Virus record (IMG/VR): IMGVR_UViG_3300036770_004143
Location: 206,076-270,075 of that record
Reading direction: 5' to 3' (one strand)
Length of the DNA stretch: 64,000 nucleotides
Below are positions 1,901 to 41,784 of this stretch, piece after piece. The position numbers and the translations under genes were made by a program. Positions within the stretch are counted from its first letter, which is position 1. Every line of letters starts with the position of its first letter. The notes beneath the pieces are model-generated. The model made no database searches and had not been told where the DNA came from. It saw only the letters and a list, made by a program, of their open reading frames with translations.

Positions 1901-1907
1901 TTTAAAA

Positions 1908-2753: not shown

Positions 2754-2770
2754 TAGTTTAAATTTGTTTG

Positions 2771-2842: not shown

Positions 2843-2846
2843 AATA

Positions 2847-3248: not shown

Positions 3249-3262
3249 AATCTTCTTTTTAT

Positions 3263-3760: not shown

Positions 3761-3784
3761 TGTTCTTTTGGTTTGATTACCTCA

Positions 3785-3816
3785 CAAAGATAAACTAAAG
3801 TTTGCAGAAGTCCAAA
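3785..3816 (-). promoter_or_regulatory. Bacteroidota sigma70 promoter
   Basis: TTTG-N20-TATCTTTG. Confidence 0.75.
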
Positions 3817-3843
3817 TGTAATGATTATTTTTTTTTCAATTAT

Positions 3844-4443
3844 TTAATCTAAACTATTAGGAAAATACAACAAAGTTGGATTACGTTTCTGAATGTCAAC
3901 CTGGGGATATGATTTCCTAAACATATCAACATCAAATCTTTTTGTGATTAAATGATAACCACTTTTAGTTGGGATTACTGCTTCAACCTTATTACCCCCT
4001 GGTCTAGTTTCATCAAGTATAGCAATAGTCTTTGCTAATTCTTTTTCATCTTTATCATCAATATCAACAATCCATCTATTCTCCATTCTTTTTACCTTCC
4101 CAACAACACTCTCAAATAAATTTTTCTGATTATGTTGTCCATTTTTGATTCTTTCAGCCAAAAGCATCATCATATCCAAGGCCACATCTTTATGGTTCTG
4201 TTTTTGAATGTGAATGTAGGTTCTTGCTTTGAAGAGTTCTGATAACTGCATAATCTCTTCATATTTGCTATCAAGATAATCCAGGCTATCAATACAATAC
4301 GTTTTAATGGTTCTGGATGACTGGTGATTATCTCTCTCCTCTTTTGGTTGATCCTTCTTTCTTTTAAGAATATATAACATATAGAAATCACCCTCTTCTG
4401 TGAAGTTTAGTAATGGTTTGATTATGTCCAGGTTGTTTATCAT
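3844..4443 (-). CDS. conserved phage protein, AEP (primase-polymerase)-like motifs
   Basis: WIVDIDD (DxD) and TKSGYHLI motifs; start moved to 4443 because the promoter overlaps 4467. Confidence 0.55.
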   Translation of the reverse strand: MINNLDIIKPLLNFTEEGDFYMLYILKRKKDQPKEERDNHQSSRTIKTYCIDSLDYLDSKYEEIMQLSELFKARTYIHIQKQNHKDVALDMMMLLAERIKNGQHNQKNLFESVVGKVKRMENRWIVDIDDKDEKELAKTIAILDETRPGGNKVEAVIPTKSGYHLITKRFDVDMFRKSYPQVDIQKRNPTLLYFPNSLD

Positions 4444-4464
4444 GTTTTTGTTTTTTTGATAAAG

Positions 4465-4496
4465 CAAAGATAAACCTAAAAACTGGTAAATGCAAA
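4465..4496 (-). promoter_or_regulatory. Bacteroidota sigma70 promoter
   Basis: TTTG-N20-TATCTTTG. Confidence 0.75.
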
Positions 4497-4501
4497 TCTA
4501 T

Positions 4502-4984
4502 TTAAAACTTTTTCATTTTGTAATGAATGGCAATGAATTTCTCATGATTTATATCATTTTCATCACATATTTTAATGATTTCTCTTAATTTACCACTAAC
4601 TTCTGAAACAACTTCACCTAATTTGTTTACCTCATCAATTAAGTTATCAATCTCTTCTTCTATGCTGGTATAACCCCCCTCTTCCCAATCAACATCATAC
4701 AATGTTTCATCATCATCTAATGTGATATATAGAAAGGCACTAAATTTACCACTATTATGTTCAATTTGAATATAAGATGCCACATCCATTGTATATAACT
4801 CAAAAAGAACCACATTTGGTTGTTCATTTTCAATAGAAAACTGGATGCCCAGATTTTTTAGGTGTTCACTTACATTTTCAATAAACTCTGCACTATTTGC
4901 CATAACTTTACTGTCCTCAACCAAATTTGTTGGTCTGGATTGAATAAGTTGTTTTAACCTATCAATATTTTCTTGTAATTTCAT
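4502..4984 (-). CDS. hypothetical protein with MKLQENIDRLKQLI leader
   Basis: ORF track; upstream ATATTTAT motif. Confidence 0.7.
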   Translation of the reverse strand: MKLQENIDRLKQLIQSRPTNLVEDSKVMANSAEFIENVSEHLKNLGIQFSIENEQPNVVLFELYTMDVASYIQIEHNSGKFSAFLYITLDDDETLYDVDWEEGGYTSIEEEIDNLIDEVNKLGEVVSEVSGKLREIIKICDENDINHEKFIAIHYKMKKF

Positions 4985-5011
4985 ATAGTTCTTTTACAAT
5001 AAATATATCCA

Positions 5012-5248
5012 TTAACTAATTAAATCAAATGATACATTATTACTATCCATCAATTCATGTAAGGTTGTCCTAACTTGAACCAAAGCATCATGTACCTCCT
5101 GGCTCATTGTGTCTGGTGCATACTTTGTCTCTGACCTCAAGTGTTGATCCAGTTCATATAAAGTCATCATTATGTCCCTACCTTTTGCAGCCAACATAAA
5201 TTGCTCCATATCCTCTGGTAGATTAAATTCCAATATTGCTTTTGCCAT
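5012..5248 (-). CDS. hypothetical protein
   Basis: MAKAILEFNLPED, 78 aa. Confidence 0.7.
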   Translation of the reverse strand: MAKAILEFNLPEDMEQFMLAAKGRDIMMTLYELDQHLRSETKYAPDTMSQEVHDALVQVRTTLHELMDSNNVSFDLIS

Positions 5249-5253
5249 CTTAT

Positions 5254-5436
5254 TTAGTTTTTAATGAATTTATAAAGTTCAAGTAATAATAACCCAGCTT
5301 CAGCCTTGGTTAGAAACATCTTACCCCTATCATGATTGATATAGGTATGAACAACAAGGATTTCCTCTGAACCATTTGATTTATCAATGGTCACTACTGG
5401 TGCTTCAACATAAATTTCATTGGGTTCTGTAATCAT
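5254..5436 (-). CDS. hypothetical protein
   Basis: 60-aa ORF downstream of the TATCTTTG box at 5456-5463. Confidence 0.55.
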   Translation of the reverse strand: MITEPNEIYVEAPVVTIDKSNGSEEILVVHTYINHDRGKMFLTKAEAGLLLLELYKFIKN

Positions 5437-5474
5437 TTTATTCTTGTTTAGACCTCAAAGATAGTAAAATACTT

Positions 5475-5636
5475 TTAATAATCCCAGGTAGATTTATCTA
5501 CTTTTTTACCATTCATAATGCAATCAAACACATAATCCCATTTTTGATTTTTAGTGATATAATCCACTAAAATTTGGCTAAACCCCAAGGAAGTGGATCC
5601 GTTTTCTGTTTCTAATTTAATGTCTAATATTTTCAT
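5475..5636 (-). CDS. hypothetical protein (MKILDIKLE...)
   Basis: Shortened from the track ORF to avoid overlap with the upstream gene. Confidence 0.45.
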   Translation of the reverse strand: MKILDIKLETENGSTSLGFSQILVDYITKNQKWDYVFDCIMNGKKVDKSTWDY

Positions 5637-5646
5637 AATTTTTGTT

Positions 5647-5970
5647 TTAATATAAGTCTTCTGAAAACAATCTGTTGCCCCTAATTTGGGATAAATCAAT
5701 TACCTGGTTTTCTTGTAATGCAATTTGAAGCCCCTCTTCACGGCTAACAAACCTATTTTTTGATGTCAAAAACCCTTGTTCATTTTCACCACTTTCAGCA
5801 TCTCTTAACCCTGTAATAGCATATTTTGTGTAAATACATTGCCCATGCCTATGGCCACTAAAAACAATACCCCTATCAAGGTTTGCTGGAAGATAAACCT
5901 CAATTGGTAATTCCTTTTTAAGTTCAATGTTTTTATACCAAATAGCAGCACATATTATTTTCTCATTCAT
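5647..5970 (-). CDS. conserved hypothetical phage protein
   Basis: ICAAIWY...GHRHGQC...EQGFLTSKNRFVSREE. Confidence 0.7.
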   Translation of the reverse strand: MNEKIICAAIWYKNIELKKELPIEVYLPANLDRGIVFSGHRHGQCIYTKYAITGLRDAESGENEQGFLTSKNRFVSREEGLQIALQENQVIDLSQIRGNRLFSEDLY

Positions 5971-6514
5971 GTTTTTGTTTATATTCTTTAATAAAAGTTT
6001 CTAAATCTTGTGGTATATCACCGTAATTATGTAATTCATATGCAAAGTTTTCAACCCATTCTTCTTCATCACCATATTCTAAATATTCATAACCAAATAA
6101 ATCATATTCTAATTCACATATTGCATGTCCAAGTTCATGAAATATTGTTGTTTCAACTGTCACCCATAATGGTACATTATATTCTTTAGAACCTTCTAAA
6201 ATATCCTTTTCTGATAAAATAACTATTGGTATTGATGAACTTGTACCACTTCTAAATCTACCTAAAGCACCTTCTCCAATATTATTGACAAATATTATTC
6301 TAATATCCTTGAATAAATCTATTTTATTTTTAAATATTTCAATTGCTTCCCTAGAAAACTTAACTATATCAGAATGTACTTTGGTTATATCTTTAACCCC
6401 ATAGTCATTAATAATATGGTTATAGTCATCACTTTCTTTATTTAAAAGAAATTCAATATCCTCATTCAAAAAATCTTGAATTGTGGTTTTAATAATTCTT
6501 CTCAAATCTTTCAT
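5963..6514 (-). CDS. HExxH zinc metallopeptidase-like protein
   Basis: TIFHELGHAICE...EEEWVENFA; leader ending FLNE. Confidence 0.65.
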   Translation of the reverse strand: MKDLRRIIKTTIQDFLNEDIEFLLNKESDDYNHIINDYGVKDITKVHSDIVKFSREAIEIFKNKIDLFKDIRIIFVNNIGEGALGRFRSGTSSSIPIVILSEKDILEGSKEYNVPLWVTVETTIFHELGHAICELEYDLFGYEYLEYGDEEEWVENFAYELHNYGDIPQDLETFIKEYKQKHE

Positions 6515-6554
6515 ATTTTATTTTATATATAAATATTAAGTTTTAAAAGTTTTG

Positions 6555-6640
6555 TGGTCAGGATAGGATTCGAACCTATATTGTTGAATTACCCAGCTTC
6601 AACTGCTTAAGTATAGCGTTTACCATTCCGCCACCTGACT
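6555..6640 (-). ncRNA. tRNA-like RNA A (Leu-type scaffold, no anticodon stem)
   Basis: AGTCAGG-TG-GCGGAATGGTAAACGC ... GTTGAA/TTCAAC arm ... ATAGG-TTCGAAT-CCTAT-CCTGACC-A. Confidence 0.65.
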
Positions 6641-11654: not shown

Positions 11655-12185
11655 TTAAGAAAAAATGTTATTATTATTTATATCCCAAGTTCCATCATTA
11701 TCAACTGATTTAATTTGGTTTGGTTCAAATGTAACATAAACACTATCTGAATCTTGATAATCTTCGTCATCAATCCAAGAATCTTTTACATTCACAAAGA
11801 TAACACCATCATATTTACTTCTATTTTTATAAACATTTGCCACAACTTCTCTTGTGGAAGTACCATATTCACTCTCAATATCATCCCATTTTTTGTCTTT
11901 ACAATCCAAAATTAATGGTCTTTTAATACTCAAATAAACTTCATAAACAATTCCATCCCTAGAATACCCCTCGGCATTATAATAATCAGGAGTGAAATAC
12001 GTAATACCCATAAATTCATCAAACTCTTCATATGAACCGTGATAAACAGGTAATGGTTTCCCGTTATAAGCAACTTTACTACCACTAAACCACTTCCTAA
12101 AATTATTATTTAAGTTATTTTCAACTTCTTGTTCTTCATTCAAATATTTACGTATTGTTTTTACTATAACTTTTCTTAGTTCCAT
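11655..12185 (-). CDS. ADP-ribosyltransferase-fold protein (ART-PolyVal-like)
   Basis: WFSGSKV...PVYHGS...YFTPD..A..Y...VYEVYLSIKRPL...YVTFEPNQIKS; start MELRK at 12185. Confidence 0.65.
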   Translation of the reverse strand: MELRKVIVKTIRKYLNEEQEVENNLNNNFRKWFSGSKVAYNGKPLPVYHGSYEEFDEFMGITYFTPDYYNAEGYSRDGIVYEVYLSIKRPLILDCKDKKWDDIESEYGTSTREVVANVYKNRSKYDGVIFVNVKDSWIDDEDYQDSDSVYVTFEPNQIKSVDNDGTWDINNNNIFS

Positions 12186-15564: not shown

Positions 15565-16296
15565 CTAATCTGGCAAACTTGTTCCCCTCTTTAACACAAC
15601 TTTATATGCCATCTTATTTCCTGTTCTTATGGCTTCTATGATGCTTTCATTCTTATATAGGGATAATGCCAAGGCAGCGGTAAAAGTGTCTCCTGCTCCA
15701 CTTATGTCAATGGTGGGGGCATTTTTCTCTTGCATGTAAACTATACCATTATGGGAAACTCCATTACCACCCATTGTTATGATAAACTTCTCTCTATTCT
15801 GATTATTAATCAAATCCTTATTGTTCTCATACTCATCCTGGTTTAGTTTAATATAATCAATGCTATTGATAATATCATCTGTTAATCTCCTCTTGCTATC
15901 CAATATGGTTGTCTTGGATTGCTTTGCTATTTTAACAATATCATCATTAGTCAAATAACCCTTATTGTAATCACTAATAATAGTGATACCATATTTGTTA
16001 TCAATGTCACCATAATAAGAATCAACATTATCCTCACCTGTGTCAACCCTTATAAAAGAATGATTGGTTTTCTCATCAACATACCTCTTCTTCTTTATCT
16101 TATTCTTCTGTGTAATTAACCTTATGCTCACATTTGAATCCATATTAATAACATTATTATATACATTCATAGCCATCCCACCAGCCTTAACCTTATGTGT
16201 TGGAATTAATACCGGAACAGGTGCTTCTGGTGATAACCTTGTGCTTTTTGTGTAAACATATATGTCTCTACAACTTTCTCCTATTACTATAATCAT
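15565..16296 (-). CDS. PfkB sugar kinase, HldE/RfaE kinase-like
   Basis: RLSPEAPVPV, ISDYNKG, DISGAGDTF. Confidence 0.85.
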   Translation of the reverse strand: MIIVIGESCRDIYVYTKSTRLSPEAPVPVLIPTHKVKAGGMAMNVYNNVINMDSNVSIRLITQKNKIKKKRYVDEKTNHSFIRVDTGEDNVDSYYGDIDNKYGITIISDYNKGYLTNDDIVKIAKQSKTTILDSKRRLTDDIINSIDYIKLNQDEYENNKDLINNQNREKFIITMGGNGVSHNGIVYMQEKNAPTIDISGAGDTFTAALALSLYKNESIIEAIRTGNKMAYKVVLKRGTSLPD

Positions 16297-17003
16297 TATC
16301 TATATATTTTTCCTTTTATAAACCCAGGTTTAATCATTTCTCTTAATTCTTCATCTGTATATTTTTCTAATTTTGTACTACCCATATACAACATACCCCC
16401 AACCTTTAAGCCTTTTGGTAATGAGGTTATTTTTATATGTCTTAAATCCAAATTACCACCAACTTTCAATCCTTCTGGTAATGATGTTATTTGTTCACAG
16501 CCAAATAATGACAAATCACGCCCAACTTTAAAACCTTTGGGTAATGAGGTTATCTTTGTATATGATAAATCCAAATTACCCCCAACTTCCAAGCCTTCTG
16601 GTAATGAGGTTATGTTTGAATCATATAAACTCAAATTACCCCCAACTTTCAATCCTTCTGATAATGAAGTTATATTTGTATATTCTAAATTCAAATCCAT
16701 TTTAACTTTTAATCCTTTAGGTAATGAAGTTATGTCTGTGTCGTTCAAACTCAAATGACCCCCAACTTCCAAACCTTCTGGTAATGAGGTTATTTTTGAT
16801 TGTGCTAAATACAAATCACCCCCAACTTTAAAACCTTCTGGTAATGAGGTTATATTTGTATATTCTAAATCCAAATCACCTTCAATGGTTAAATCTTTCT
16901 CTGTTAACGGTATATCATTCATATGTTTCCACAAAAATGGTGCTCTACGCTTCTCCTTCTCTTCAAGGAACTCAAATATTCTTTTTAATTGTTCTTCTTC
17001 CAT
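16296..17003 (-). CDS. LRR paralogue 1
   Basis: 20-21-aa repeats ITSLPEGLKVGGxLxL; shared N-cap LKRIFEFL and C-cap EMIKPGFIKG. Confidence 0.9.
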   Translation of the reverse strand: MEEEQLKRIFEFLEEKEKRRAPFLWKHMNDIPLTEKDLTIEGDLDLEYTNITSLPEGFKVGGDLYLAQSKITSLPEGLEVGGHLSLNDTDITSLPKGLKVKMDLNLEYTNITSLSEGLKVGGNLSLYDSNITSLPEGLEVGGNLDLSYTKITSLPKGFKVGRDLSLFGCEQITSLPEGLKVGGNLDLRHIKITSLPKGLKVGGMLYMGSTKLEKYTDEELREMIKPGFIKGKIYR

Positions 17004-17530
17004 TATCTATATATATTTCCTTTTATAAACCCAGGTTTAATCATGTCTCTTATCTCATCATCTGTGTATTTGGCTAAATTTGTTCCATAAATATACAAAT
17101 ATGTACCAACCTCCAATCCTTTTGGTAATGAAGTTATTTTTGTATGTCTTAAATCCAAATTACCGCCAACTTTCAATCCTTCTGGTAATGATGTTATTTG
17201 TTCACAGCCAAATAACGACAAGTCACGCCCAACTTTAAAACCTTCTGGTAGTGAAGTTATTTTACTATTTTTTAAATATATTATACCATCAACTTTTAAA
17301 CTTTTTGGTAATGAGGTTATGGCTAAACCAATCAAACTCAAGGAACCCCCCACTTCCAATCCTTCTGGCAATGATGTTATTTTTGAACCTTTTAAATTCA
17401 AATTACCTTTAACAATTAATTCTTCTTTTGTTAATGGCATTTCATTCTTAAATTTCCATAAAAATGGTACTTTGTGACCTTCCTTCTCTTCAAGGAACTC
17501 AAATATTCTTTTTAGTTGTTCTTCTTCCAT
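17003..17530 (-). CDS. LRR paralogue 2
   Basis: Same caps and repeats. Confidence 0.9.
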   Translation of the reverse strand: MEEEQLKRIFEFLEEKEGHKVPFLWKFKNEMPLTKEELIVKGNLNLKGSKITSLPEGLEVGGSLSLIGLAITSLPKSLKVDGIIYLKNSKITSLPEGFKVGRDLSLFGCEQITSLPEGLKVGGNLDLRHTKITSLPKGLEVGTYLYIYGTNLAKYTDDEIRDMIKPGFIKGNIYR

Positions 17531-18294
17531 TATCTTACTATTCTTCCGTTTATAAACCCAGGTTTAATCATTTCTCTTAATTCTTCATCATCTAAATCCA
17601 TTGCAAATACACTTGCTCGGATAAATAAATCACCCCCAACTTGCAAACCTTTTGGAATCGGTGTCACATTGGTGTTATATATATTTAAATACCCACCAAC
17701 TTTTAATCCTTCTGGTAATGAAATAGTCCCCAACCCAGTTAAATCCAAATCACCTTTAATATCCAAAGTGTTAGTAATAAAAGTTTTTGAAGTTATTAAT
17801 CCACCAATTTTTAAACCATTTGGTATTTTTGTTAACCTATCTAATTCTGTGTATTTCACAATTAAAATACCCCCAACTTGCAAACCTTTTGGAAGTGATT
17901 CCACTTGTGTATCTGATAAATCCAAAGAACCACCAACTTGCAAATCTTCTGGTAATGAGGTTATGTTTGCATATGATAAAGTTAAATCAACCCCAACTTT
18001 TAATCCCCTTGGTAATGATTTTATAAGACTATGATCCAAATATAGGCTACCACCAACTTCCAAACCTTCTGGTAATGTTTCTATATCTGATTCAGTTAAA
18101 TTCAAATCACCTCCAACTTTCAATCCTTCTGGTAGTGATTCTATATTTGAATCTGAAAAATCCAAATCACCTTTAACATTTAAATCTTCTTCTGTTAATG
18201 GTTGATTATTTATTAACTTCCAAATAAATGGCACTTTATGTTCTCCTTTTCCTTCAAGGAATTCAAATATTCTTTTTAGTTGCTCTTTTTCCAT
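17530..18294 (-). CDS. LRR paralogue 3
   Basis: Same caps; irregular central repeats. Confidence 0.9.
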   Translation of the reverse strand: MEKEQLKRIFEFLEGKGEHKVPFIWKLINNQPLTEEDLNVKGDLDFSDSNIESLPEGLKVGGDLNLTESDIETLPEGLEVGGSLYLDHSLIKSLPRGLKVGVDLTLSYANITSLPEDLQVGGSLDLSDTQVESLPKGLQVGGILIVKYTELDRLTKIPNGLKIGGLITSKTFITNTLDIKGDLDLTGLGTISLPEGLKVGGYLNIYNTNVTPIPKGLQVGGDLFIRASVFAMDLDDEELREMIKPGFINGRIVR

Positions 18295-18297
18295 AAG

Positions 18298-18813
18298 TTA
18301 CTCCCATTCATCATCTATTTCTCCACCCACTTGGCCACCAGTTGATTCAATCTTGTTATATAACTGATCAACTGTATATGATTTGGCAAGTGGAGTATTA
18401 GCAATATAAAAATTATTATAAATGTACAAATTATTTGGCACATTTGTTATTTCATTACATCCCATAATATATAAATTCTGCCCAACATACAAATTGTCTG
18501 GAAGACTTGATATATTAGTATAATCTAAATATAAATCATCTTGAACATATAATCTATCTGGTAGATTTATTAACTCTTTGCAAAAACTCAAGTTCATTGT
18601 ACCCTTAATATATAAGTCATTTGGCAATTTTCTTATATCAGAATTATTTACATCTAAATAACCATCATATACATATCTTTTATCACTTGAATATGCTTCA
18701 AGTTCATCAACCAAATCTTGCTTAAGAATGAAGTTTACCATTCTTATAGGTTGATCCACATTCTCTCTCTCTTTGAGAAATTTGAATATCTTGCTTAATT
18801 GTTCTGCTCTCAT
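18298..18813 (-). CDS. LRR paralogue 4 (divergent)
   Basis: LPDRLYV/LPDNLYV repeats; divergent caps (LSKIFKFL). Confidence 0.85.
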   Translation of the reverse strand: MRAEQLSKIFKFLKERENVDQPIRMVNFILKQDLVDELEAYSSDKRYVYDGYLDVNNSDIRKLPNDLYIKGTMNLSFCKELINLPDRLYVQDDLYLDYTNISSLPDNLYVGQNLYIMGCNEITNVPNNLYIYNNFYIANTPLAKSYTVDQLYNKIESTGGQVGGEIDDEWE

Positions 18814-19508
18814 GGTCTTCTTATTCTTCCTAATACAAATCCAGGTTTTATCATTTCTCTTATTTCATCATCTGTGTATTTTATTGCTATAAACAAATCA
18901 CCCCCAACTGCCAATCCTTTTGGCAATGTTTTTATTGATAACATAGATAAATCCAAGTCTTGGCCAACTTTTAAATCCTCTGGTAATGAGTTTATTTTTG
19001 TGTTATTCAACCACAAGTTGCCCCAAACTACCAATCCTTCTGGTAATGATTCTATTTTTGATTTTATTAAATCCAAACTACCCTGGAGTTTTAAACCTTT
19101 TGGTAATGAAGTTATTTCTGAACCAAGAAGACTCAAATTACGATAAACTTCCAAGCCTTCTGGTAATGAGGTTATTTTTGAATTATTTAAATTTAAATTA
19201 CCCGTAACTTTTAATCCTTTTGGTAATGATTTTATACTTGATGCGTTTAAGTCCAAATCACCCCCAACTTCCAAGCCTTCTGGTAGTGATTTTAAAAATT
19301 TGGTCATATCCAAGTGCAAATCACCATAAACTTTCAAGCCTTCTGGTAATGAGGTTACGTTACTATACGACAAATCCAAATCATCATCAACAATTAATTC
19401 TTCTTTTGTTAATGGTTGATTGTTTATAAACTTCCATCTTAATGGCACTTTATGTTCCCCTTTCCTTTCAAGGAAATCAAATATTCTTTTTAATGCTTCG
19501 TTTTTCAT
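18810..19508 (-). CDS. LRR paralogue 5
   Basis: Same caps and repeats. Confidence 0.9.
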   Translation of the reverse strand: MKNEALKRIFDFLERKGEHKVPLRWKFINNQPLTKEELIVDDDLDLSYSNVTSLPEGLKVYGDLHLDMTKFLKSLPEGLEVGGDLDLNASSIKSLPKGLKVTGNLNLNNSKITSLPEGLEVYRNLSLLGSEITSLPKGLKLQGSLDLIKSKIESLPEGLVVWGNLWLNNTKINSLPEDLKVGQDLDLSMLSIKTLPKGLAVGGDLFIAIKYTDDEIREMIKPGFVLGRIRRP

Positions 19509-19915
19509 TATCCTATTATTTCACCTTTTATAAATCCAGGTTTTATCATTTCTATTATATCCTCATGATAATAATCTTCACTTATGGGTGTTCTATAGAT
19601 ATACAATTTACCACCAACTTTCAAGCCTTTTGGTAGTGAATTTATTAATGAACCAGATAAATCCAAATTACCACCAACTTCCAACCCTTCTGGTAATGAT
19701 TTTATTATTGTTTCATCTAATTCCAAAGTACCCTCAACTTTCAAGCCTTCTGGCAATGATGTTATATTTATATCTGTTAAAATCAAATCACCTTTAACAT
19801 TTAATTCATCTTCTGTTAGTGGTATATTATTTTTCAACTTCCAAATAAATGGTGCTTTATGTTCCCCTTTCCTTTCAAGGAAATCAAATATTCTTTTTAA
19901 TACTTCTTTTTTCAT
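19508..19915 (-). CDS. LRR paralogue 6
   Basis: Short version, about 3 repeats. Confidence 0.9.
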   Translation of the reverse strand: MKKEVLKRIFDFLERKGEHKAPFIWKLKNNIPLTEDELNVKGDLILTDINITSLPEGLKVEGTLELDETIIKSLPEGLEVGGNLDLSGSLINSLPKGLKVGGKLYIYRTPISEDYYHEDIIEMIKPGFIKGEIIG

Positions 19916-20694
19916 TACCTTTTTATTTTTCCTTTTATAAATCCAGGTTGAATCATCTTTCTTAATTTATAAGTAGTAAGTTCATTTAAAGATGAATATT
20001 CCAACATTAAATCTCCAAAAACTTCTAATCCTTTTGGCAATGACTTTATTGTTGTATATTGCAATAATAAATCACCACCAACTTTCAAACCTTCTGGCAA
20101 TGATTTTATTTGCTCGCAACCAAATAATAACAAATCACCCCAAACTTCCAATCCTTCTGGTAATGAAGTTAATTCTTTGCAATATGCTAAATTCAATTTA
20201 CCATTAACTTTCAAATCATCTGGTAATGTTTCTATCTTTGACTCTCGTAAATATAACTCACCACCAACTTCCAATCCTTTTGGTAATGATTTTATACCTG
20301 TATCTAATAAATTTAGAACACCATCAACTTTTAAGCCTTCTGGTAATGATTCTATTTCTGAACGCATTAAATTTAATGATCCAACTTTCAAACTTTTTGG
20401 TAGTGTTTTTATTGACGTATAAGATAAATCCAAATTACCACCAACTTCCAACCCTTCTGGTAAAGAGATTATATTTGACCATTGTAAATTTAAATTACCA
20501 CCAACTTTCAATCCTTTTGGTAATGAGGTTATGTCTTTCATACTCAAATTCAAATCACCTTTAATATCCAAATCTTTCTTTGTTAATGGCTCATTAAAGA
20601 CTATTCTCCATAGTAATGTCCCTTTTGCTTGGTGTGATTTCTTTTCCTTATCTTCAAGAAATTCAAATATTCTTTTTAATGCTTCTTTTTCCAT
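19915..20694 (-). CDS. LRR paralogue 7
   Basis: Longest member, about 9 repeats. Confidence 0.9.
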   Translation of the reverse strand: MEKEALKRIFEFLEDKEKKSHQAKGTLLWRIVFNEPLTKKDLDIKGDLNLSMKDITSLPKGLKVGGNLNLQWSNIISLPEGLEVGGNLDLSYTSIKTLPKSLKVGSLNLMRSEIESLPEGLKVDGVLNLLDTGIKSLPKGLEVGGELYLRESKIETLPDDLKVNGKLNLAYCKELTSLPEGLEVWGDLLLFGCEQIKSLPEGLKVGGDLLLQYTTIKSLPKGLEVFGDLMLEYSSLNELTTYKLRKMIQPGFIKGKIKR

Positions 20695-21233
20695 TATCTT
20701 ATTATTTCCCCTTTTATAAATCCAGGTTTAATCATATCTCTTAATTCTTTATCTATGTATTCTAATAATGCTGTATTTTTAATAATCAACTCACCTTTAA
20801 CTTCCAACCCTTTTGGCAATAAGGTTATCTTTGTTCTTCTTAAATCCAAAGTGCCACCAACTTGCAAACCTTTTGGAAGCAATTCCACTTGTGTATCTGA
20901 TAAATCCAAATCCCTACCAACTTGCAAATCTTCTGGTAATGAGGTTATGTTTGAACCTTCCAAATATATATCACGTCTAACATATAAATCACTTGGTAAT
21001 GATTTTAATTTAGGTGTATAAGATAAATTCAAATTGCCACCAATTTTTAAACCTTCTGGTAAGTAGGGTATATCTGAATGTTCTAAAAACAAACCACCTT
21101 TAATATCCAAATCTTCCTTTGTTAATGGCTCATTAAATTCAATTTTCCATCTCAAAGTTCCTTTTACTTTGGCCAATTTATTTTCCTTCTCTTCAAGGAA
21201 TTCAAATATTCTTTTTAGTTGTTCTTTTTGCAT
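20694..21233 (-). CDS. LRR paralogue 8
   Basis: Same caps and repeats. Confidence 0.9.
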   Translation of the reverse strand: MQKEQLKRIFEFLEEKENKLAKVKGTLRWKIEFNEPLTKEDLDIKGGLFLEHSDIPYLPEGLKIGGNLNLSYTPKLKSLPSDLYVRRDIYLEGSNITSLPEDLQVGRDLDLSDTQVELLPKGLQVGGTLDLRRTKITLLPKGLEVKGELIIKNTALLEYIDKELRDMIKPGFIKGEIIR

Positions 21234-21700
21234 TATTTATGTATTTTTCCTTTCACAAATCCAGGTTTTATCATTTCTAATAATTCATAACGTTCATATT
21301 TCATCATTGTTGTCAATTCCAAATGTAAATCACCACCAACTTCCAATCCTTTTGGTAATGATTTTATATCTGTATATGTTAAATCCAAATCACCACCAAC
21401 TTTTAACCCTTCTGGTAATGATTCTATTATTGAGCCTTCCAAGTATATATCACCTTTAACATCTAAATCACTTGGTAATGATTTTAATTTAGGTGTATAA
21501 GATAAATTCAAATCACCAGCAACTTTCAAACCTTCTGGTAAGGATTTTATTTTTGAAAATGCTAAATTCAAATCACTTGTAACATTTAAATCTTCCTTTA
21601 CTATTGGCTCATTATTTACTAATTTCCATTTAAATGGTGTTTTATGTTCTCCCTTCCTTTCAAGGAAATCAAATATTCTTTTTAATGCTTCTTTTTCCAT
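21233..21700 (-). CDS. LRR paralogue 9
   Basis: Same caps and repeats. Confidence 0.9.
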   Translation of the reverse strand: MEKEALKRIFDFLERKGEHKTPFKWKLVNNEPIVKEDLNVTSDLNLAFSKIKSLPEGLKVAGDLNLSYTPKLKSLPSDLDVKGDIYLEGSIIESLPEGLKVGGDLDLTYTDIKSLPKGLEVGGDLHLELTTMMKYERYELLEMIKPGFVKGKIHK

Positions 21701-22170
21701 TATCTATATATTTCTCCTTTTATAAACCCAGGTTTAATCATTTCTCTTAATTCATCATCTGTGTATTTTGTTAATGGTGTATAACGAATATTCAAATCAC
21801 CATCAACATATAAACTTTCTGGTAATGAGGTTATGTTATTACAATAAGCTAAATTCAAACCACCACCAACTTTCAAACCTTCTGGTAATGATGTTATTCT
21901 GGTATGAAGTAAATTTAATGCTCCACCAACTTTTAATCCTTTTGGTAATGAATTTAATTTTTCAGAATATGATAAAACCAAATCACCACTAACTTTCAAT
22001 CCTTCTGGTAATGAGGTTATCTTTGAATCAAATAAATACAAACGACCCTTAATATTTAATTCTTCTTTTGTGAATGGTATTTCACATTTGACTTTAAATA
22101 TAAACGGCACTTTATGTTTTTCCTTCTCTTCAAGGAATTCAAATATTCTTTTTAGTTGTTCTTTTTTCAT
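21700..22170 (-). CDS. LRR paralogue 10 (first gene of array 1)
   Basis: Same caps; ATATTTAT at 22187-22194 upstream. Confidence 0.9.
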   Translation of the reverse strand: MKKEQLKRIFEFLEEKEKHKVPFIFKVKCEIPFTKEELNIKGRLYLFDSKITSLPEGLKVSGDLVLSYSEKLNSLPKGLKVGGALNLLHTRITSLPEGLKVGGGLNLAYCNNITSLPESLYVDGDLNIRYTPLTKYTDDELREMIKPGFIKGEIYR

Positions 22171-26194: not shown

Positions 26195-26608
26195 TTAAAA
26201 GTAATGAATCCTCTTTAAATACCCATCATCTCCAACCATATTTCTCAATTCACTATTACTATATTCACCTAATGGTGATGTATCAATGTATAAAGTGCCA
26301 CCAACTTTCAATCCTTCAGGTAATGAGTGTAAGTTGTAACAATTTTGTAAAATCAAATTACCTCTAACTATTAACCCTTCTGGTAATGAACTTATATTAT
26401 CACAAAAACTTAAAATCAAATCACCACTAACTTCCAATCCTTCTGGTAGTGATTCTATATTTGAATATGTCAAATCCAAATCACCTTCAATATCTAAATC
26501 TTTTTCTGTTAATGGTATTTCATTTTTCCATTTCCATAAGAATGGTGGATTGTGTTCTTCCTTTTCTTCAAGGAATTCAAATATTCTTTTTAATGCTTCT
26601 TTTTTCAT
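26195..26608 (-). CDS. LRR paralogue 11
   Basis: Same N-cap and repeats; variant C-cap. Confidence 0.9.
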   Translation of the reverse strand: MKKEALKRIFEFLEEKEEHNPPFLWKWKNEIPLTEKDLDIEGDLDLTYSNIESLPEGLEVSGDLILSFCDNISSLPEGLIVRGNLILQNCYNLHSLPEGLKVGGTLYIDTSPLGEYSNSELRNMVGDDGYLKRIHYF

Positions 26609-27255
26609 TATCTAAATATTCCTCCTTTTATAAATCCAGGTTTAACCATTTCTCTTAATTGATTATCTGAATATTCTTCTAATGCCGTACCTAATATAAA
26701 TAGGTGTTCACCAATTTCTAATCCTTTTGGTAATGAGGTTATTTTTGTGCCTGATAAATCCAAATGCTCACTAACTGTAAGTCCTTGGGGTAATGATTTT
26801 AATGTTGTACAACTATTTAAAGCAAGATAACCATCAACCTTTAAACCTTTTGGTAAAGATTGTATTTTTGAAAAAGCCAAATCAATACTCCCATTAACCT
26901 CCAAATCTTTTGGCAGTATCTCAATGGATGTGTATGATAAAATTAAATCTTCTTCAACTACCAATCCTTTTGGTAAATATTTTATGCTTGAATATGATAA
27001 ATTGAAATGTTCTCCAACTTCCAATCCTTCTGGTAATGATTCTATTTTTGAAGCATATAAACTTAAATTACCCCCAACCTTCAACCCTTTTGGTAATGAG
27101 GTAATTTCTGATCCTTCAAAAATTAAATCCCCTTTAACATTTAACTCTTCTTTTGTTAATGGTATATTATTAATCAATTTCCATTTAACTGGTAGATTAT
27201 ACCCTTCCTTCTCTTTTAGGAATTCAAATATTCTTTTTAAGGTTTCTTTTTTCAT
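26608..27255 (-). CDS. LRR paralogue 12
   Basis: Same caps and repeats. Confidence 0.9.
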   Translation of the reverse strand: MKKETLKRIFEFLKEKEGYNLPVKWKLINNIPLTKEELNVKGDLIFEGSEITSLPKGLKVGGNLSLYASKIESLPEGLEVGEHFNLSYSSIKYLPKGLVVEEDLILSYTSIEILPKDLEVNGSIDLAFSKIQSLPKGLKVDGYLALNSCTTLKSLPQGLTVSEHLDLSGTKITSLPKGLEIGEHLFILGTALEEYSDNQLREMVKPGFIKGGIFR

Positions 27256-27263
27256 ATCATATA

Positions 27264-27734
27264 TTAATTATCATCATCTTCTTCATAATCATCTTCATCT
27301 TCATAATCATAATCAATGTAATATTCAGAAATTATATCACCTTTTATAAAACCAGGTTCAATTGATTTTCTTAAATGATCATCATTTTTATAGTAATAAG
27401 GTAGTTCAGATTCAGTTACATCTAAATGCCCCCCAACTTTCAATCCTTTTGGTAATGAAGTTATGCTTGTTCTTACTAAAAATAAACTATCACCAATTTC
27501 CAATCCTTCTGGTAGTGATTTTATTTTTGAACGAGATAAATCTAACCAACCACTAATTTTCAAGCCTTTTGGTAATGAGGTAATTTTTCTATCCTGTAAA
27601 TCCAAATCACCTTTAATATTTAATTCTTCTTCTGTTAATGGCTCACCATTTTCCCATTTCCACAAGAATGGAGTATTATGTTCTCCCTTCTTTTCAAGGA
27701 ACTCAAATATTCTTTTTAATGCTTCTTTTTCCAT
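27264..27734 (-). CDS. LRR paralogue 13 with acidic tail
   Basis: Same caps; ends YDYEDEDDYEEDDDN. Confidence 0.9.
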   Translation of the reverse strand: MEKEALKRIFEFLEKKGEHNTPFLWKWENGEPLTEEELNIKGDLDLQDRKITSLPKGLKISGWLDLSRSKIKSLPEGLEIGDSLFLVRTSITSLPKGLKVGGHLDVTESELPYYYKNDDHLRKSIEPGFIKGDIISEYYIDYDYEDEDDYEEDDDN

Positions 27735-28636
27735 TATTTTCTATTTGTTTTCTCACCCTCTATTCTTACAGATATTTTTGGTTTATACCCTTTTGGCAAT
27801 CTATTATCTATTCCAACAAATTCCCCCATTTCATTATCCATTCTAATAGTAATTTCTCTCTTATCCAAATTCATCATTATCTGCCCCACAGTCTGCATAT
27901 TATACATATTCTTCATTCTATAAGGATTCAAGAACTTATTTTTCTTATATTGTTCTTTCATCTTATCAATAACATCTTGATCCTTTTGAGCATCTTGCAA
28001 ATGCTTTTTGGCCAACTCCAATCTTGAATGGGATGACTTCTTCTTTATGCCATAAATATAACCTGTTTTTTTGTGTACTATGCCATGATTGGTTCTTACC
28101 TCAACCTTATCATCACCCATCTTTGTTATGACCGGAGTGTCCTTACTTGTGAGTTCAATAATATATATATTCTTTGGGCTTCCAACAATTGTCTGCCCCT
28201 TAATTCCAACATTCTTTGGATCATCTGCGTCATAAGATATGATTGATTTAATCACATCTTTTAAATTCCTAAAACTTAATGCTCTACGTATTTTCTTACC
28301 ATCATTGGAGTTCTTAACTTTCTTGGACTTGAATACTTTATTACTTTCCTTCTCATCTTGCCTAACCAATAGACTTGAATTAACTATTCCAATACCGTAT
28401 TCATTCATTCCCTCGGACCAGTCTGTTTCTGTATCTCTCCAATACATAACCTCAACATCATCCACAATCTCATGGACAATTTCCATCTTTGCCAAATAAC
28501 CCCTATCCCTGTTTTTGGCTATAACATTCCCATCATCTAATCTAACAGCAGCAATTGTGCATTCTTGGATTAGCCTTTGTTCATCTAAAATATTTACTTG
28601 ACTTTCAGTAAGCAAAATGAATTTATTATCTTTCAT
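27734..28636 (-). CDS. Ntn-hydrolase-like protein (C45/NRDE-like) with 25-aa leader
   Basis: LIQE-CTIAAV...IAKNRDR...SEGMNEYGIGIVNSSL...RTNHG. Confidence 0.6.
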   Translation of the reverse strand: MKDNKFILLTESQVNILDEQRLIQECTIAAVRLDDGNVIAKNRDRGYLAKMEIVHEIVDDVEVMYWRDTETDWSEGMNEYGIGIVNSSLLVRQDEKESNKVFKSKKVKNSNDGKKIRRALSFRNLKDVIKSIISYDADDPKNVGIKGQTIVGSPKNIYIIELTSKDTPVITKMGDDKVEVRTNHGIVHKKTGYIYGIKKKSSHSRLELAKKHLQDAQKDQDVIDKMKEQYKKNKFLNPYRMKNMYNMQTVGQIMMNLDKREITIRMDNEMGEFVGIDNRLPKGYKPKISVRIEGEKTNRK

Positions 28637-28655: not shown

Positions 28656-29072
28656 TCAAGACAATGATTTAATCAAACTCATCATCTTATCATCTATATA
28701 TAACCCACTTAATTCTTCATAGGTAAAATAGCCACATTCTGTATGCTCATCACCATCCATAGCATTCTCCAAATCTGGAACTAATTTCTTATCTGGGCTG
28801 TCTAATAAGAACACATTGAACCTACCATTTATCTTGCTACCATCTCTTGAATATCTATCAATGGATGCAATAGGTGTTAGTTTCCTATTTGTTATATGAA
28901 TATTAGTTTCCTCATAGAACTCCCTTTTAGCACCTTCATGTGTTGTTTCAAATGTTTCCAATTTCCCAGCAGGAACTGACCACATTCCAGGCAAACTATT
29001 GCTCTTTGGACTTCTCTTGCAAAGTAGAAACTCCTTATTGTGTCTTACTAATACACCAACATACTCTCTCAT
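28656..29072 (-). CDS. NUDIX hydrolase
   Basis: GKLETFETTHEGAKREFYEETNI Nudix box. Confidence 0.9.
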   Translation of the reverse strand: MREYVGVLVRHNKEFLLCKRSPKSNSLPGMWSVPAGKLETFETTHEGAKREFYEETNIHITNRKLTPIASIDRYSRDGSKINGRFNVFLLDSPDKKLVPDLENAMDGDEHTECGYFTYEELSGLYIDDKMMSLIKSLS

Positions 29073-40731: not shown

Positions 40732-41784
40732 TTACTGTGTGATTTTATTATAGTTAATCAACTTCTTCATTTTATTAAACTCTTCACTTAAAACTACATC
40801 ATTATTTTCAATAGACTCACCCTTCATTTTCTTAATGAAATCAGGTCTTTTATCACCATTCTGAACAATATGAACATCTTGTGATTTTTCATAAGCCCTC
40901 TTCTTTTCTGAACCATAAAAATTATTCTTTCTTTTTGTATTCATTTTCTTATTAATATCTGTTTCAACAGCATTTGCCCACTTGGGATTATTCCCAGTCC
41001 TTGAACTTCCCTCAATATTATCTTTCATCCATTCTTCATTAGGATCCACCTCATCATACATTAAGTTCTCCATTCCTGGTCCACGACCCAAATTTTCAAC
41101 ATACTCTTCTTCTGCACCATCCATACGGTAACCAACAATATCAGACTTCTTTAATTGCATATTTGATTGGGGGAAAGAATCTGGGTTCTCAACATACTTA
41201 CCATTTGAGCCATATTTGATATATTCCTTCATCTTCTTACCAACATCTTTCATGTTGTCATCATTCTCCTTTTTTGACCTCTTTAATAGAGTTTCAACAT
41301 TAGTTAGACTTTTTGGTTTTTTTGTAAATGTATCTCCATCCGCTTCATTAACTATATTTCTAATAAATGAAACCAATCCTTCTTCTGTCATCTTAACAGT
41401 TTTATCCCTTAATGTAATATCACCTGTTTCATTAATGATGTCTTCAATAAATGAAATAAGACTTTCTTCAGTCATCTTAACATTTTTCTTACCTTTCTTC
41501 AATAGTTTGAAATCTTCAGAATCAATCTTGCCATTCTTATTCTTATCAATCTTATGTTGCTTACCAACCAATTTTTCCTTAACTTCTTTCTTACCTTTCT
41601 TCAATAGTTTGAAATCTTCAGAATCAATTTTACCATTTTTGTTCTTGTCAATCTTATGTTGTTTACCAACCAATTTCTCATCTATATTTTTCTTCACTTT
41701 CTTCTCAAATAACAAGTTTGACCTTTTACTAAATTCCTCATTCAATACCTTGTTAACAATTGAATCAATATTATTTTTATTCAT
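40732..41784 (-). CDS. putative head core/internal protein with duplicated EF-hand-like motif
   Basis: Two DKNKNGKIDSEDF loops; several (V/I/L)xE motifs. Confidence 0.6.
   Translation of the reverse strand: MNKNNIDSIVNKVLNEEFSKRSNLLFEKKVKKNIDEKLVGKQHKIDKNKNGKIDSEDFKLLKKGKKEVKEKLVGKQHKIDKNKNGKIDSEDFKLLKKGKKNVKMTEESLISFIEDIINETGDITLRDKTVKMTEEGLVSFIRNIVNEADGDTFTKKPKSLTNVETLLKRSKKENDDNMKDVGKKMKEYIKYGSNGKYVENPDSFPQSNMQLKKSDIVGYRMDGAEEEYVENLGRGPGMENLMYDEVDPNEEWMKDNIEGSSRTGNNPKWANAVETDINKKMNTKRKNNFYGSEKKRAYEKSQDVHIVQNGDKRPDFIKKMKGESIENNDVVLSEEFNKMKKLINYNKITQ
41476..41679 (-). repeat. two 102-nt (34-aa) tandem coding repeats
   Basis: EKLVGKQHKIDKNKNGKIDSEDFKLLKKGKK(E/N)VK x2 with synonymous differences. 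Confidence 0.9.

What the first reader, a model, noticed from the sequence alone, without database searches (positions are those of the whole stretch)
27734..28636. Ntn-hydrolase whose catalytic Cys directly follows an IQE protease-type site
Seen: a 25-aa leader ends ...EQRLIQE and is followed by CTIAAV...AKNRD. Known: Ntn hydrolases need a free N-terminal nucleophile, and Cys-type members usually have Met-Cys or self-cleave. Inference: here activation may depend on the phage prohead protease, arming the enzyme only inside mature virions.
Basis: inference. Interest (0 to 1): 0.6.

Follow-up and report, generated by a model that had tools for sequence, protein, structure and literature searches.

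The report
Phage Ntn hydrolase with protease-type leader
A T4-like jumbo phage encodes a cysteine N-terminal-nucleophile amidase whose catalytic cysteine sits directly behind a T4-type head-protease cutting motif, so the phage's own capsid-maturation protease, rather than the usual self-cleavage, may switch the enzyme on.

Summary
Window 27734-28636 (minus strand) encodes a 300-aa protein with a 25-residue leader ending I-Q-E, followed by Cys26.

- **Fold.** An AlphaFold model (pLDDT 84) matches Cys-Ntn hydrolases (NAAA, acid ceramidase, isopenicillin-N acyltransferase, BSH/PVA; Z 16-20). Residue 26 aligns with the first residue of each mature chain.
- **Genome.** The 270-kb phage encodes a T4 gp21-type prohead protease (Pfam S77). 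Its gp23-type capsid protein has I-N-E|A at the propeptide boundary.
- **Site conservation.** Among 357 distinct family sites, 240 have Glu before the Cys. Their P3 is I, L or V in 234, and P2 is free. Leaders are otherwise unconserved and can be as short as M-I-N-E.
- **Other site types.** A second lineage has [K/R]-x-[A/S/G]|Cys (83 of 83) in viruses where no S77 was found. A third has Met-Cys.
- **Shared leaders.** About 20 other proteins of this phage carry similar leaders, including polyvalent-type ADP-ribosyltransferases and a Tae4-like amidase.

Trans-activation by the prohead protease is therefore well supported by comparison but not shown. Classical self-cleavage is not excluded, and packaging into the virion is inferred. 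I rate it a new variant of known kinds, with moderately high interest.

The parts
27734..28636 (-). Whole ORF (300 codons plus stop) of the Cys-Ntn hydrolase precursor, protein P0001
   Evidence: 1219 homologues by word search; 542 representatives at 50% identity
28562..28636 (-). Leader or propeptide, residues 1-25. It contains three [L/I]-x-E motifs: L-T-E at 9-11, L-D-E at 17-19 and I-Q-E at 23-25
   Evidence: pLDDT is below 50 for residues 1-9 and 14-24 of the model. Leaders of orthologues vary in length (4-40 aa) and in sequence
28562..28570 (-). I23-Q24-E25, the T4 gp21-type (I/L)-x-E motif at P3-P1 of the scissile bond
   Evidence: E25 is invariant. With P1 = E, P3 is I, L or V in 234 of 240 sites and P2 is free. 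T4 gp21 specificity for I/LxE is taken from PMC12991175
28559..28561 (-). Cys26 codon, the predicted N-terminal nucleophile of the mature enzyme
   Evidence: It is invariant. It aligns with the first residue of mature NAAA beta chain, acid ceramidase C143, IAT C103, BSH C2 and PVA C1
27737..28561 (-). Mature Ntn-hydrolase domain, residues 26-300 (alpha-beta-beta-alpha sandwich)
   Evidence: AF2 pLDDT 84, pTM 0.84. Foldseek E 2e-9 to IAT 2x1c. VIA-align Z 20.4 to NAAA 6dxy_B and 18.9 to IAT. Pfam AAT E 2.5e-4, below the cut-off
28502..28513 (-). N42-R43-D44-R45, an invariant motif 16-19 residues after the nucleophile. This is the position of the Arg/Asp that support the nucleophile in IAT, BSH and NAAA (assignment by position, from knowledge of those families)
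   Evidence: It is invariant in A1 and in the class-B and class-C alignments A2 and A3
28082..28090 (-). N183-H184-G185, an invariant motif and candidate oxyanion-hole Asn (inference by analogy with Asn175 of PVA/BSH)
   Evidence: It is invariant in A1, A2 and A4
27917..27919 (-). R240 (N-P-Y-R), an invariant Arg and candidate counterpart of the conserved active-site Arg of PVA/BSH/IAT (inference)
   Evidence: It is invariant in A1
28656..29072 (-). Upstream neighbour, a Nudix hydrolase. It gives context only. The linkage is kept only in close relatives
   Evidence: Pfam NUDIX E 1.4e-15. It is adjacent in 6 of 80 class-A loci only
11655..12185 (-). Another leader-bearing ORF in the window, an ART-PolyVal ADP-ribosyltransferase. 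It has an amphipathic N-terminal leader containing L-N-E
   Evidence: Pfam PF18760 E 3.1e-19. Leader similarity was seen by eye in the ORF listing; it scored 36, below the 99th-percentile control

Best explanation
The gene encodes a zymogen of a cysteine N-terminal-nucleophile (Ntn) amidohydrolase of the AAT/NAAA/PVA clan. Residues 1-25 are a T4-style propeptide whose last three residues (I-Q-E) form the recognition motif of the phage's own gp21-family (S77) prohead protease. Cutting after Glu25 creates the free alpha-amino group of Cys26, which an Ntn hydrolase needs for catalysis. The enzyme would therefore stay off in the infected cell and be switched on when the head matures. The leader belongs to a set of interchangeable amphipathic leaders shared with about 20 other proteins of this phage, including polyvalent-type ADP-ribosyltransferases and a Tae4-like amidase. 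I therefore infer that the protein is loaded into the prohead like the T4 internal proteins and Alt, and is delivered to the next host with the DNA. Shown: the ORF, the Ntn fold, the position of the Cys, the conserved site signature, the S77 protease with its catalytic His and Ser, the capsid-protein site, and the shared leaders. Inferred: that S77 cuts at Glu25, that self-cleavage is slow or absent, that the protein is packaged and ejected, and what the substrate is (an amide bond of a lipid, peptide or cell-wall compound; not determined).
For: Fold and nucleophile. S77 protease in the same genome (E 5e-23, above the Pfam cut-off), alignable with the T4 gp21 structure 5JBL, with His in the N-H-P motif and Ser in the S-S-R-G motif. 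The gp23-type capsid protein has I-N-E|A, aligned with L-D-E|A and V-S-E|A in related genomes. Site statistics: P1 = E in 240 of 357 sites, with P3 = I, L or V in 234 of those 240 and 15 different residues at P2. The alternative class is [K/R]-x-[A/S/G] in 83 of 83, and 31 sites are Met-Cys. Minimal leaders M-I-N-E, M-L-N-E and M-K-L-S-E keep exactly the motif. S77 is present in 9 of the 10 class-A records that are at least 90% complete. That one record (G007) and two less complete ones without S77 also lack the capsid gene, so they are uninformative. S77 is found in 0 of 8 class-B records, one of which has terminal repeats. The leader has low confidence in the model, so it is not docked on the domain. 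In this genome, 24 of 237 N-termini resemble the leaders of Ntn orthologues (2.4 expected). Nineteen of 23 of them carry [L/I]-x-E, against 83 of 214 other proteins (p 8e-5). Leader-bearing proteins include ART-PolyVal (E 3e-19) and Tae4 (E 2.5e-9), and their homologues keep the leader and its Glu residues. The T4 internal-protein leaders end I-A-E|A and I-T-E|A. T4 propeptides of 10-20 residues are removed by gp21: PMC9958956, PMC5694885. gp21 prefers I/LxE: PMC12991175.
Against: Every characterised Ntn hydrolase with a pro-segment activates itself (PMC9140057), using the same residues that are intact here. The association of site type with protease type is confounded by phylogeny, because class A forms one clade of T4-like phages. 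Two complete T4-like genomes carry Met-Cys versions (G029, G030), so the leader is dispensable. Four-residue leaders are too short to be a T4-type capsid-targeting sequence. The gene lies among non-structural genes (Nudix, metallophosphatase), and there are no virion proteomics. The complex prediction of protease with precursor gave no answer.
Confidence: 0.4

Rival explanations
1. Classical autoproteolysis. The precursor cleaves itself at Glu25|Cys26 by an N-to-S acyl shift, as IAT, NAAA, acid ceramidase and PVA do. The conserved [L/I]-x-E would then serve the intramolecular reaction (for example a P3 anchor, or the P1 carboxylate as base) or some other leader function, and the prohead protease plays no part.
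For: Self-activation is a hallmark of the superfamily, including class II amidotransferases with a few residues in front of the Cys (PMC9140057). All candidate catalytic residues are invariant. The closest structures include self-processing precursors (2x1c, 6dxw, 2iwm).
Against: The same fold and the same invariant active-site motifs are preceded by three mutually exclusive signatures: [L/I/V]-x-E, [K/R]-x-[A/S/G] and Met. No single P3/P1 chemistry is therefore required by the reaction. The E-type signature coincides with the specificity of the protease encoded in the same genomes and with the capsid-protein site. Similar leaders with [L/I]-x-E sit on proteins that cannot self-cleave by an Ntn mechanism. 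The model does not dock the leader on the domain.
Confidence: 0.3
2. Protease-dependent but not packaged. The S77 protease unmasks Cys26 in the cytoplasm late in infection. The enzyme would then be a late-timed effector, for example acting on the envelope before lysis, rather than virion cargo.
For: T4 gp21 expressed alone cleaves a cytoplasmic host protein at an I/LxE-type loop (PMC12991175). Many orthologues have leaders of only 4-5 residues, too short for a T4-like targeting sequence. The gene lies outside the head module.
Against: The long leaders of this protein and its close relatives belong to leader classes shared with polyvalent-type ADP-ribosyltransferases, which resemble the packaged T4 Alt. 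In another virus lineage the same domain is part of giant multi-enzyme proteins of the injected 'polyvalent' type.
Confidence: 0.17
3. The Ntn domain is itself a processing peptidase. It would cut polyvalent or leader-bearing cargo proteins, in the role proposed for zincin-like peptidases in polyvalent proteins, and its own leader would be removed as its first substrate.
For: The domain sits at the N-terminus of 1000-2400-aa multi-enzyme proteins. Families C45 and C69 of the clan include peptidases. Polyvalent proteins are proposed to be processed by embedded peptidases (PMC5512222).
Against: The genome already has a dedicated S77 protease whose known specificity fits the sites. There is no evidence for endopeptidase activity in the closest structural relatives, which are amidases and acyltransferases.
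Confidence: 0.05

Closest known systems
Isopenicillin-N acyltransferase of Penicillium chrysogenum (Pfam AAT PF03417, peptidase family C45; PDB 2X1C, 2X1D)
   Same: It is the best Foldseek match (E 2e-9) with VIA-align Z 18.9. Cys103 of the mature beta chain aligns with Cys26. It is the only Pfam family hit, found in 34 of 48 homologues.
   Different: IAT keeps a 102-residue alpha chain and cleaves itself at Gly|Cys. Here there is only a short, variable leader ending [L/I]-x-E. Identity is about 13-15%, and this protein scores below the Pfam cut-off (21.3 against 23.2 bits).
NAAA and acid ceramidase (lysosomal Cys-Ntn lipid amidases; PDB 6DXY, 5U7Z)
   Same: They give the highest structural Z (20.4 and 19.0). 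The mature beta chain starts exactly at the residue aligned with Cys26.
   Different: They are eukaryotic, glycosylated, acid-activated self-processing heterodimers with a retained alpha subunit. No sequence similarity is detectable by HMMER.
Penicillin V acylase and bile salt hydrolase (C59)
   Same: They are single-chain Cys-Ntn enzymes whose nucleophile is exposed by removal of Met or of a very short propeptide. Z is 16-17 over the whole domain. The Met-Cys members of this family (31 sites) work the same way.
   Different: No [L/I]-x-E leader and no link to a viral protease.
T4 internal head proteins IPI, IPII and IPIII, and Alt (capsid-targeting sequence plus gp21 cleavage)
   Same: They have N-terminal propeptides of 10-19 residues ending I-A-E|A or I-T-E|A, removed by the S77 protease inside the prohead (PMC9958956, PMC5694885). 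Alt is an ADP-ribosyltransferase, and this phage has leader-bearing ADP-ribosyltransferases.
   Different: In T4 the cut only trims the protein. Here the cut would create the catalytic residue itself. There is no sequence homology between the leaders beyond their general character, and packaging is not shown here.
Class II (PurF-type) glutamine amidotransferases
   Same: They are Cys-Ntn domains in which the N-terminal Cys is preceded by a few residues that must be removed (PMC9140057).
   Different: Removal is described as autocatalytic, the fold family differs, and they are cellular enzymes.
Polyvalent proteins of phages and conjugative elements (Iyer et al. 2017, PMC5512222)
   Same: Class-B relatives combine the Ntn domain with topoisomerase IB, nucleotidyltransferase, 2H phosphoesterase, GGACT, SOD and other domains in one polypeptide. 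ART-PolyVal domains occur with the same leaders in this phage.
   Different: The window's protein has a single domain. An Ntn domain is not mentioned in that paper (0 occurrences).

Membership tests
Ntn-hydrolase superfamily, Cys-nucleophile clan (AAT/C45, NAAA and acid ceramidase, PVA/BSH C59, C69) | Four-layer alpha-beta-beta-alpha fold | tested here: met
   AF2 model with pLDDT 84. Seventy-eight PDB matches have E <= 0.001; all 33 listed are Ntn hydrolases. Z is 16-20 over residues 26-300
Ntn-hydrolase superfamily, Cys-nucleophile clan | Nucleophile (Cys, Ser or Thr) at the first position of the mature chain, at the start of a central beta strand | tested here: met
   Cys26 is invariant and aligns with residue 1 of mature NAAA, acid ceramidase, IAT, BSH and PVA chains. 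A strand starts at residue 28 of the model
Ntn-hydrolase superfamily, Cys-nucleophile clan | Supporting polar residues (Asp/Arg about 16-19 residues after the nucleophile, an oxyanion Asn, a distal Arg) | tested here: inconclusive
   N42-R43-D44-R45, N183 and R240 are invariant. Their equivalence to the catalytic residues of solved enzymes was judged by position only, not residue by residue in a superposition
Ntn-hydrolase superfamily, Cys-nucleophile clan | Activation by autoproteolysis of the precursor | not testable with these tools
   This needs expression of the precursor. The comparative data point to cleavage in trans but do not exclude self-cleavage
Pfam AAT (PF03417) | Score above the curated gathering threshold (23.2 bits) | tested here: not met
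   This protein scores 21.3 bits, E 2.5e-4, over residues 117-268 only. Thirty-four of 48 homologues match at E <= 0.01, the best at 2.5e-7. It is a distant relative, not a clear member
Substrates of T4-type (S77, gp21) prohead protease | (I/L)-x-E immediately before the mature N-terminus | tested here: met
   I23-Q24-E25|C26. The motif is kept in 234 of the 240 sites with Glu at P1
Substrates of T4-type (S77, gp21) prohead protease | An S77 protease encoded by the same phage, with catalytic His and Ser | tested here: met
   Genome 104848-105549 (minus strand), Pfam E 5e-23. It aligns with 5JBL with His and Ser in place
Substrates of T4-type (S77, gp21) prohead protease | Experimentally observed cleavage (semi-specific peptide or mature N-terminus in virions) | not testable with these tools
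   No proteomics exist for this uncultured phage. The papers found for MA9V-1, MA9V-2 and MA9V-3 were not read, so whether they report virion proteomics is unknown
T4-type capsid-targeted internal head proteins | N-terminal targeting propeptide of about 10-20 residues shared among several cargo proteins | tested here: met
   A 25-residue leader. Leader classes are shared with 23-24 other ORFs of the genome against 2.4 expected. That the leader actually targets proteins to the capsid is not tested
T4-type capsid-targeted internal head proteins | Presence inside the capsid and ejection into the host | not testable with these tools
   Inference only
Polyvalent proteins (Iyer et al. 2017) | Two or more domains of disparate activity in one polypeptide | tested here: not met
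   The window's protein has a single domain. Class-B relatives do meet the criterion

The most novel reading that the evidence does not exclude
The residues in front of the catalytic Cys report which maturation protease the virus uses. T4-like jumbo phages would have an exchangeable 'propeptide code': amphipathic leaders ending (I/L)-x-E that mark about 20 enzymes (Ntn hydrolase, ADP-ribosyltransferases, Tae4-like amidase and others) for loading into the prohead and trimming by the S77 protease. For the Ntn hydrolase the same cut creates the active site, which would make it the first Ntn enzyme activated in trans by a viral protease. A second virus lineage, with [K/R]-x-[A/S/G]|Cys and R-V-A-S-R-[Y/F] leaders on giant multi-enzyme proteins, would then use an as yet unidentified protease of different specificity.
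Probability: 0.3. Interest if true: 0.8.

Novelty: new variant of a known kind. Interest (0 to 1): 0.62.

Why it matters
Ntn hydrolases are the textbook case of enzymes that activate themselves. A member whose nucleophile is unmasked by a different, virus-encoded protease would break that rule. It would also show a simple way for a phage to carry a potentially dangerous amidase safely through its own replication and release it active into the next host.

In practice, the leader plus (I/L)-x-E signature would let packaged or ejected effector proteins be read directly from the genomes of uncultured T4-like jumbo phages. The site in front of the Cys could also be used to infer protease specificity in viruses whose maturation protease is unknown.

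The hypothesis can be tested with one expression experiment, and with virion proteomics of two cultured Chryseobacterium phages.

Tried and rejected
- **Complex prediction.** Prediction of the S77 protease with the full precursor gave a score of 0.00 and 'no answer'. It is evidence neither for nor against.
- **PDB sequence search.** A sequence-profile search of PDB chains with alignment A1 found nothing meaningful, the best being E 0.026 to isocitrate dehydrogenase. Only fold comparison found the family.
- **PHROGs.** No useful hit, E 0.1.
- **Phage DNA search.** Megablast of the region against cultured phages gave no match. tblastn found only Chryseobacterium phages MA9V-1 and MA9V-2 at about 38% identity.
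- **Gene neighbourhood.** The adjacent Nudix, metallophosphatase and DUF192 genes are kept only in 6 close relatives, and a 448-aa neighbour in 19 of 80. No neighbour is kept in the 160 loci from the two other scans. A Nudix gene next to a class-B giant protein is therefore probably coincidence.
- **Class-B protease.** I looked for the maturation protease of class-B viruses. S77, S78 and ClpP families were all absent from five records, so it remains unidentified.
- **Apparent counterexamples.** Three class-A records without S77 (G004, G007, G036) also lack any gp23-type capsid gene. They are truncated assemblies, not counterexamples.
- **Alternative start.** An alternative start codon giving Met-Cys was rejected, because there is no in-frame start between Met1 and Cys26.
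- **Large protein search.** It was used once, because the question turned on whether distant relatives have the leader.
Full report
**Observation.** The ORF at window 27734-28636 lies on the minus strand and encodes 300 residues (P0001).
- Residues 1-25 form a leader that ends L-I-Q-E.
- Residue 26 is Cys, followed by T-I-A-A-V, and K-N-R-D-R lies at residues 41-45.
- No in-frame start codon lies between Met1 and Cys26.

**Genome context.** The window is the last 64 kb of a 270,075-bp virus record.
- It has 31% G+C and eight tRNA genes, and almost all genes are on one strand.
- The genome encodes a T4 gp21-family prohead protease. The Pfam S77 match has E 5e-23, at genome 104848-105549.
- That protease aligns with the T4 gp21 structure 5JBL (E 4.5e-12), with His in the N-H-P motif and Ser in the S-S-R-G motif.
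- The genome also encodes a gp23-type major capsid protein, an acidic scaffold-like ORF and portal- and terminase-sized ORFs nearby, the last three assigned by size, position and composition only.
- It is therefore a T4-like jumbo phage.
- The only cultured phages with a homologue of the protein are Chryseobacterium phages MA9V-1 and MA9V-2, at about 38% identity. They also carry an S77 domain. A Bacteroidota host is plausible but was not tested.

**Fold.**
- Pfam gives only a sub-threshold match to AAT (E 2.5e-4), though 34 of 48 homologues match it.
- An AlphaFold2 model built on 48 homologues has pLDDT 84 and pTM 0.84.
- Foldseek finds 78 PDB chains at E <= 0.001; all 33 listed are Ntn hydrolases, led by isopenicillin-N acyltransferase.
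- VIA-align gives Z 20.4 to the NAAA beta chain, 20.2 to CV2077, 19.0 to acid ceramidase, 18.9 to IAT and 16-17 to BSH, PVA and C69 dipeptidase.
- In the mature chains the alignment starts at model residue 26 and at the first residue of the chain: IAT 103, acid ceramidase 143, BSH 2, PVA 1.
- Cys26, N42-R43-D44-R45, N183-H184-G185 and R240 are invariant.

The protein is therefore an intact Cys-Ntn hydrolase with Cys26 as nucleophile.

**The site in front of the Cys.**
- The word search found 1219 homologues, and the exhaustive profile search found 542 representatives at 50% identity.
- With 240 IMG/VR loci added, I collected 357 distinct scissile sites. They fall into three classes:

| Class | Site | Count | Details |
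|---|---|---|---|
| A | [L/I/V]-x-E\|C | 240 | P3 = I 115, L 102, V 17, M 4, T 1, F 1; 15 different residues at P2 |
| B | [K/R]-x-[A/S/G]\|C | 83 | P3 = K 49, R 34, no exception |
| C | Met-Cys | 31 | no leader |

- Class-A leaders are otherwise unconserved. Their length runs from 4 residues (M-I-N-E, M-L-N-E; also M-K-L-S-E) to about 40, or the Cys lies inside a longer fusion protein.
- In fusions such as P0049, a second copy of a leader-like segment precedes the internal Cys.
- The invariant active-site motifs are the same in all three classes. The P3/P1 signature is therefore not dictated by a single chemistry of self-cleavage.

**Link to the prohead protease.**
- T4 gp21 cuts after Glu in I/L-x-E motifs (PMC12991175; PMC5694885).
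- It removes 10-20-residue propeptides from the internal proteins and Alt, and 65 residues from gp23 (PMC9958956).
- The T4 leaders read from the genome end I-A-E|A (IPII, IPIII) and I-T-E|A (IPI).
- In this phage the capsid protein has I-N-E|A at about residue 60. This aligns with L-D-E|A and V-S-E|A in other T4-like genomes that carry the Ntn gene.
- Among class-A virus records at least 90% complete, 9 of 10 contain S77. That one record (G007) and two less complete ones without S77 also lack any capsid gene, so they are truncated.
- None of eight class-B records has S77, including one of 222 kb with terminal repeats. Five of them were also checked for S78 and ClpP and have neither.
- Two complete T4-like genomes carry Met-Cys versions, so a leader is not obligatory in such phages.
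It is confounded by descent, because class A is essentially one clade.

**Leaders are shared with other proteins.**
- The leaders of Ntn orthologues fall into a few types. Examples are an I-L-T-E-S-Q-L type, an N-L-I-R-S-I-L-N-E type and an N-L-Q-E-N-I type.
- I aligned 93 such leaders against the first 30 residues of the 237 other proteins of this genome that have at least 130 residues.
- Twenty-four N-termini scored above the 99th percentile of internal control windows, against 2.4 expected.
- With the last four leader residues removed from the queries, 23 still pass. Nineteen of those 23 have [L/I]-x-E within residues 8-32, against 83 of 214 other proteins (odds ratio 7.5, p 8e-5).
- Leader-bearing proteins include:
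  - an ART-PolyVal ADP-ribosyltransferase in the window at 11655-12185 (E 3e-19), flagged by eye; it scored 36, below the cut-off;
  - two weaker ART-PolyVal matches;
  - a Tae4-like amidase (E 2.5e-9).
- Six homologues of one ADP-ribosyltransferase keep a 15-residue leader ending [L/I]-M-E.
- Twenty-six homologues of the amidase keep the leader, with nearly invariant Glu8 and Glu21, and one has a large insertion directly after the second motif.
- These proteins cannot self-cleave by an Ntn mechanism. If their leaders are removed at all, a trans-acting protease must do it.

**Wider family.**
- Class-B members are often the N-terminal domain of 1000-2400-residue proteins.
- These proteins also contain topoisomerase IB (11 of 48), poly(A)-polymerase-type nucleotidyltransferase, 2H phosphoesterase, GGACT, superoxide dismutase, phosphatidylserine decarboxylase, RNA ligase and zeta-toxin-like domains.
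- They lie on phage-like contigs.
- This is the architecture that Iyer et al. called polyvalent proteins and proposed to be injected with the DNA (PMC5512222). That paper does not mention an Ntn domain.
- Some Met-Cys members lie on contigs labelled as giant-virus MAGs.

**Interpretation.** The most economical reading is that the leader is a propeptide read by the S77 protease, and that the cut after Glu25 creates the catalytic N-terminus.
- I give about 0.57 to protease-dependent unmasking overall. That splits into packaging as head cargo (0.40, the best explanation) and a cytoplasmic late-timer variant (0.17).
- The late-timer variant is suggested by the 4-residue leaders and by the finding that gp21 can cut a cytoplasmic protein.
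- Classical autoproteolysis keeps 0.30, because it is the rule for the superfamily (PMC9140057) and nothing here measures it.
- The substrate is unknown. The closest folds are lipid and small-molecule amidases. Domain partners and leader-sharing proteins suggest host take-over or envelope attack, but that is speculation.

**Novelty.**
- Full-text searches found no paper that links an Ntn hydrolase with a prohead protease or with ejection proteins. The single co-occurrence concerned an archaeal virus and was not opened.
- Both components are known kinds: Ntn zymogens, and propeptides processed by gp21.
- Their combination, in which the viral protease would create the nucleophile, is a new variant.
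- The shared leader set in these jumbo phages was likewise not found described in those searches.

Noticed in passing
window 11655-12185 (-): A 176-aa ORF with an amphipathic N-terminal leader containing L-N-E. It is a clear ART-PolyVal ADP-ribosyltransferase (Pfam E 3.1e-19) and a possible functional analogue of the packaged T4 Alt protein.
   Followed up: partly
window 26195-27734 (-) and 16296-22170 (-): A large multigene family of leucine-rich-repeat-like ORFs. All start with a near-identical motif (M-E/K-K-E-x-L-K-R-I-F-E-F-L). Three copies lie directly downstream of the Ntn gene, ten more lie in one block, and there are more than 40 genome-wide. The copy tested has no Pfam match.
   Followed up: partly
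window 264-6640 (-): Eight tRNA genes (Lys, Gln, Cys, His, Arg, Tyr, Thr, Leu) lie in a cluster, as is usual in large T4-like phages.
   Followed up: no
genome 174.8-187.4 kb (locus L250), outside the window: A cluster of nine leader-bearing ORFs. It includes two weak ART-PolyVal matches, a Tae4-like amidase and a weak SprT-like match, and may be a cargo or effector gene island.
   Followed up: partly
genome 190.5-202 kb, outside the window: A tandem array of about 25 small ORFs (60-80 aa), most starting M-K-N-I or M-R-N-V. Function is unknown.
   Followed up: no
proteins P0152-P0255; locus L008 10001-16018: Relatives with [K/R]-x-[A/S/G]|Cys sites form the N-terminal domain of 1000-2400-aa multi-enzyme proteins (topoisomerase IB, nucleotidyltransferase, 2H phosphoesterase, GGACT, SOD and others). 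Their viruses have no detectable S77, S78 or ClpP protease. The leaders often contain R-V-A-S-R-[Y/F].
   Followed up: partly
loci L171, L172, L179, L199: Met-Cys versions of the Ntn hydrolase lie on contigs labelled as giant-virus MAGs (GVMAG) in IMG/VR.
   Followed up: no
L006, L007 (Chryseobacterium phages MA9V-2, MA9V-1): In these phages the S77 protease domain lies within an open frame of 1213-1349 residues. This suggests a protease fused to a much larger protein, or an uninterrupted reading frame across several genes.
   Followed up: no
proteins P0005, P0006, P0046, P0049: Close homologues (62-70% identity) are called as 420-484-aa proteins, in which a further domain precedes a complete leader-like segment and then the Cys. 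Some may be over-extended gene calls, since P0005 and P0006 have an internal Met at the leader start. P0049 looks like a true fusion with two leaders.
   Followed up: partly
window 28656-29072 (-); T4 locus L272: A Nudix hydrolase lies directly upstream of the Ntn gene. In T4 the Nudix gene nudE lies beside e and the internal-protein genes ipIII and ipII. The linkage here is kept only in six close relatives, so it is probably not meaningful.
   Followed up: yes
window 40732-41784 (-): A 350-aa ORF with a leader-like N-terminus and EF-hand or dockerin-type calcium-binding repeats (Pfam E about 6e-8).
   Followed up: no
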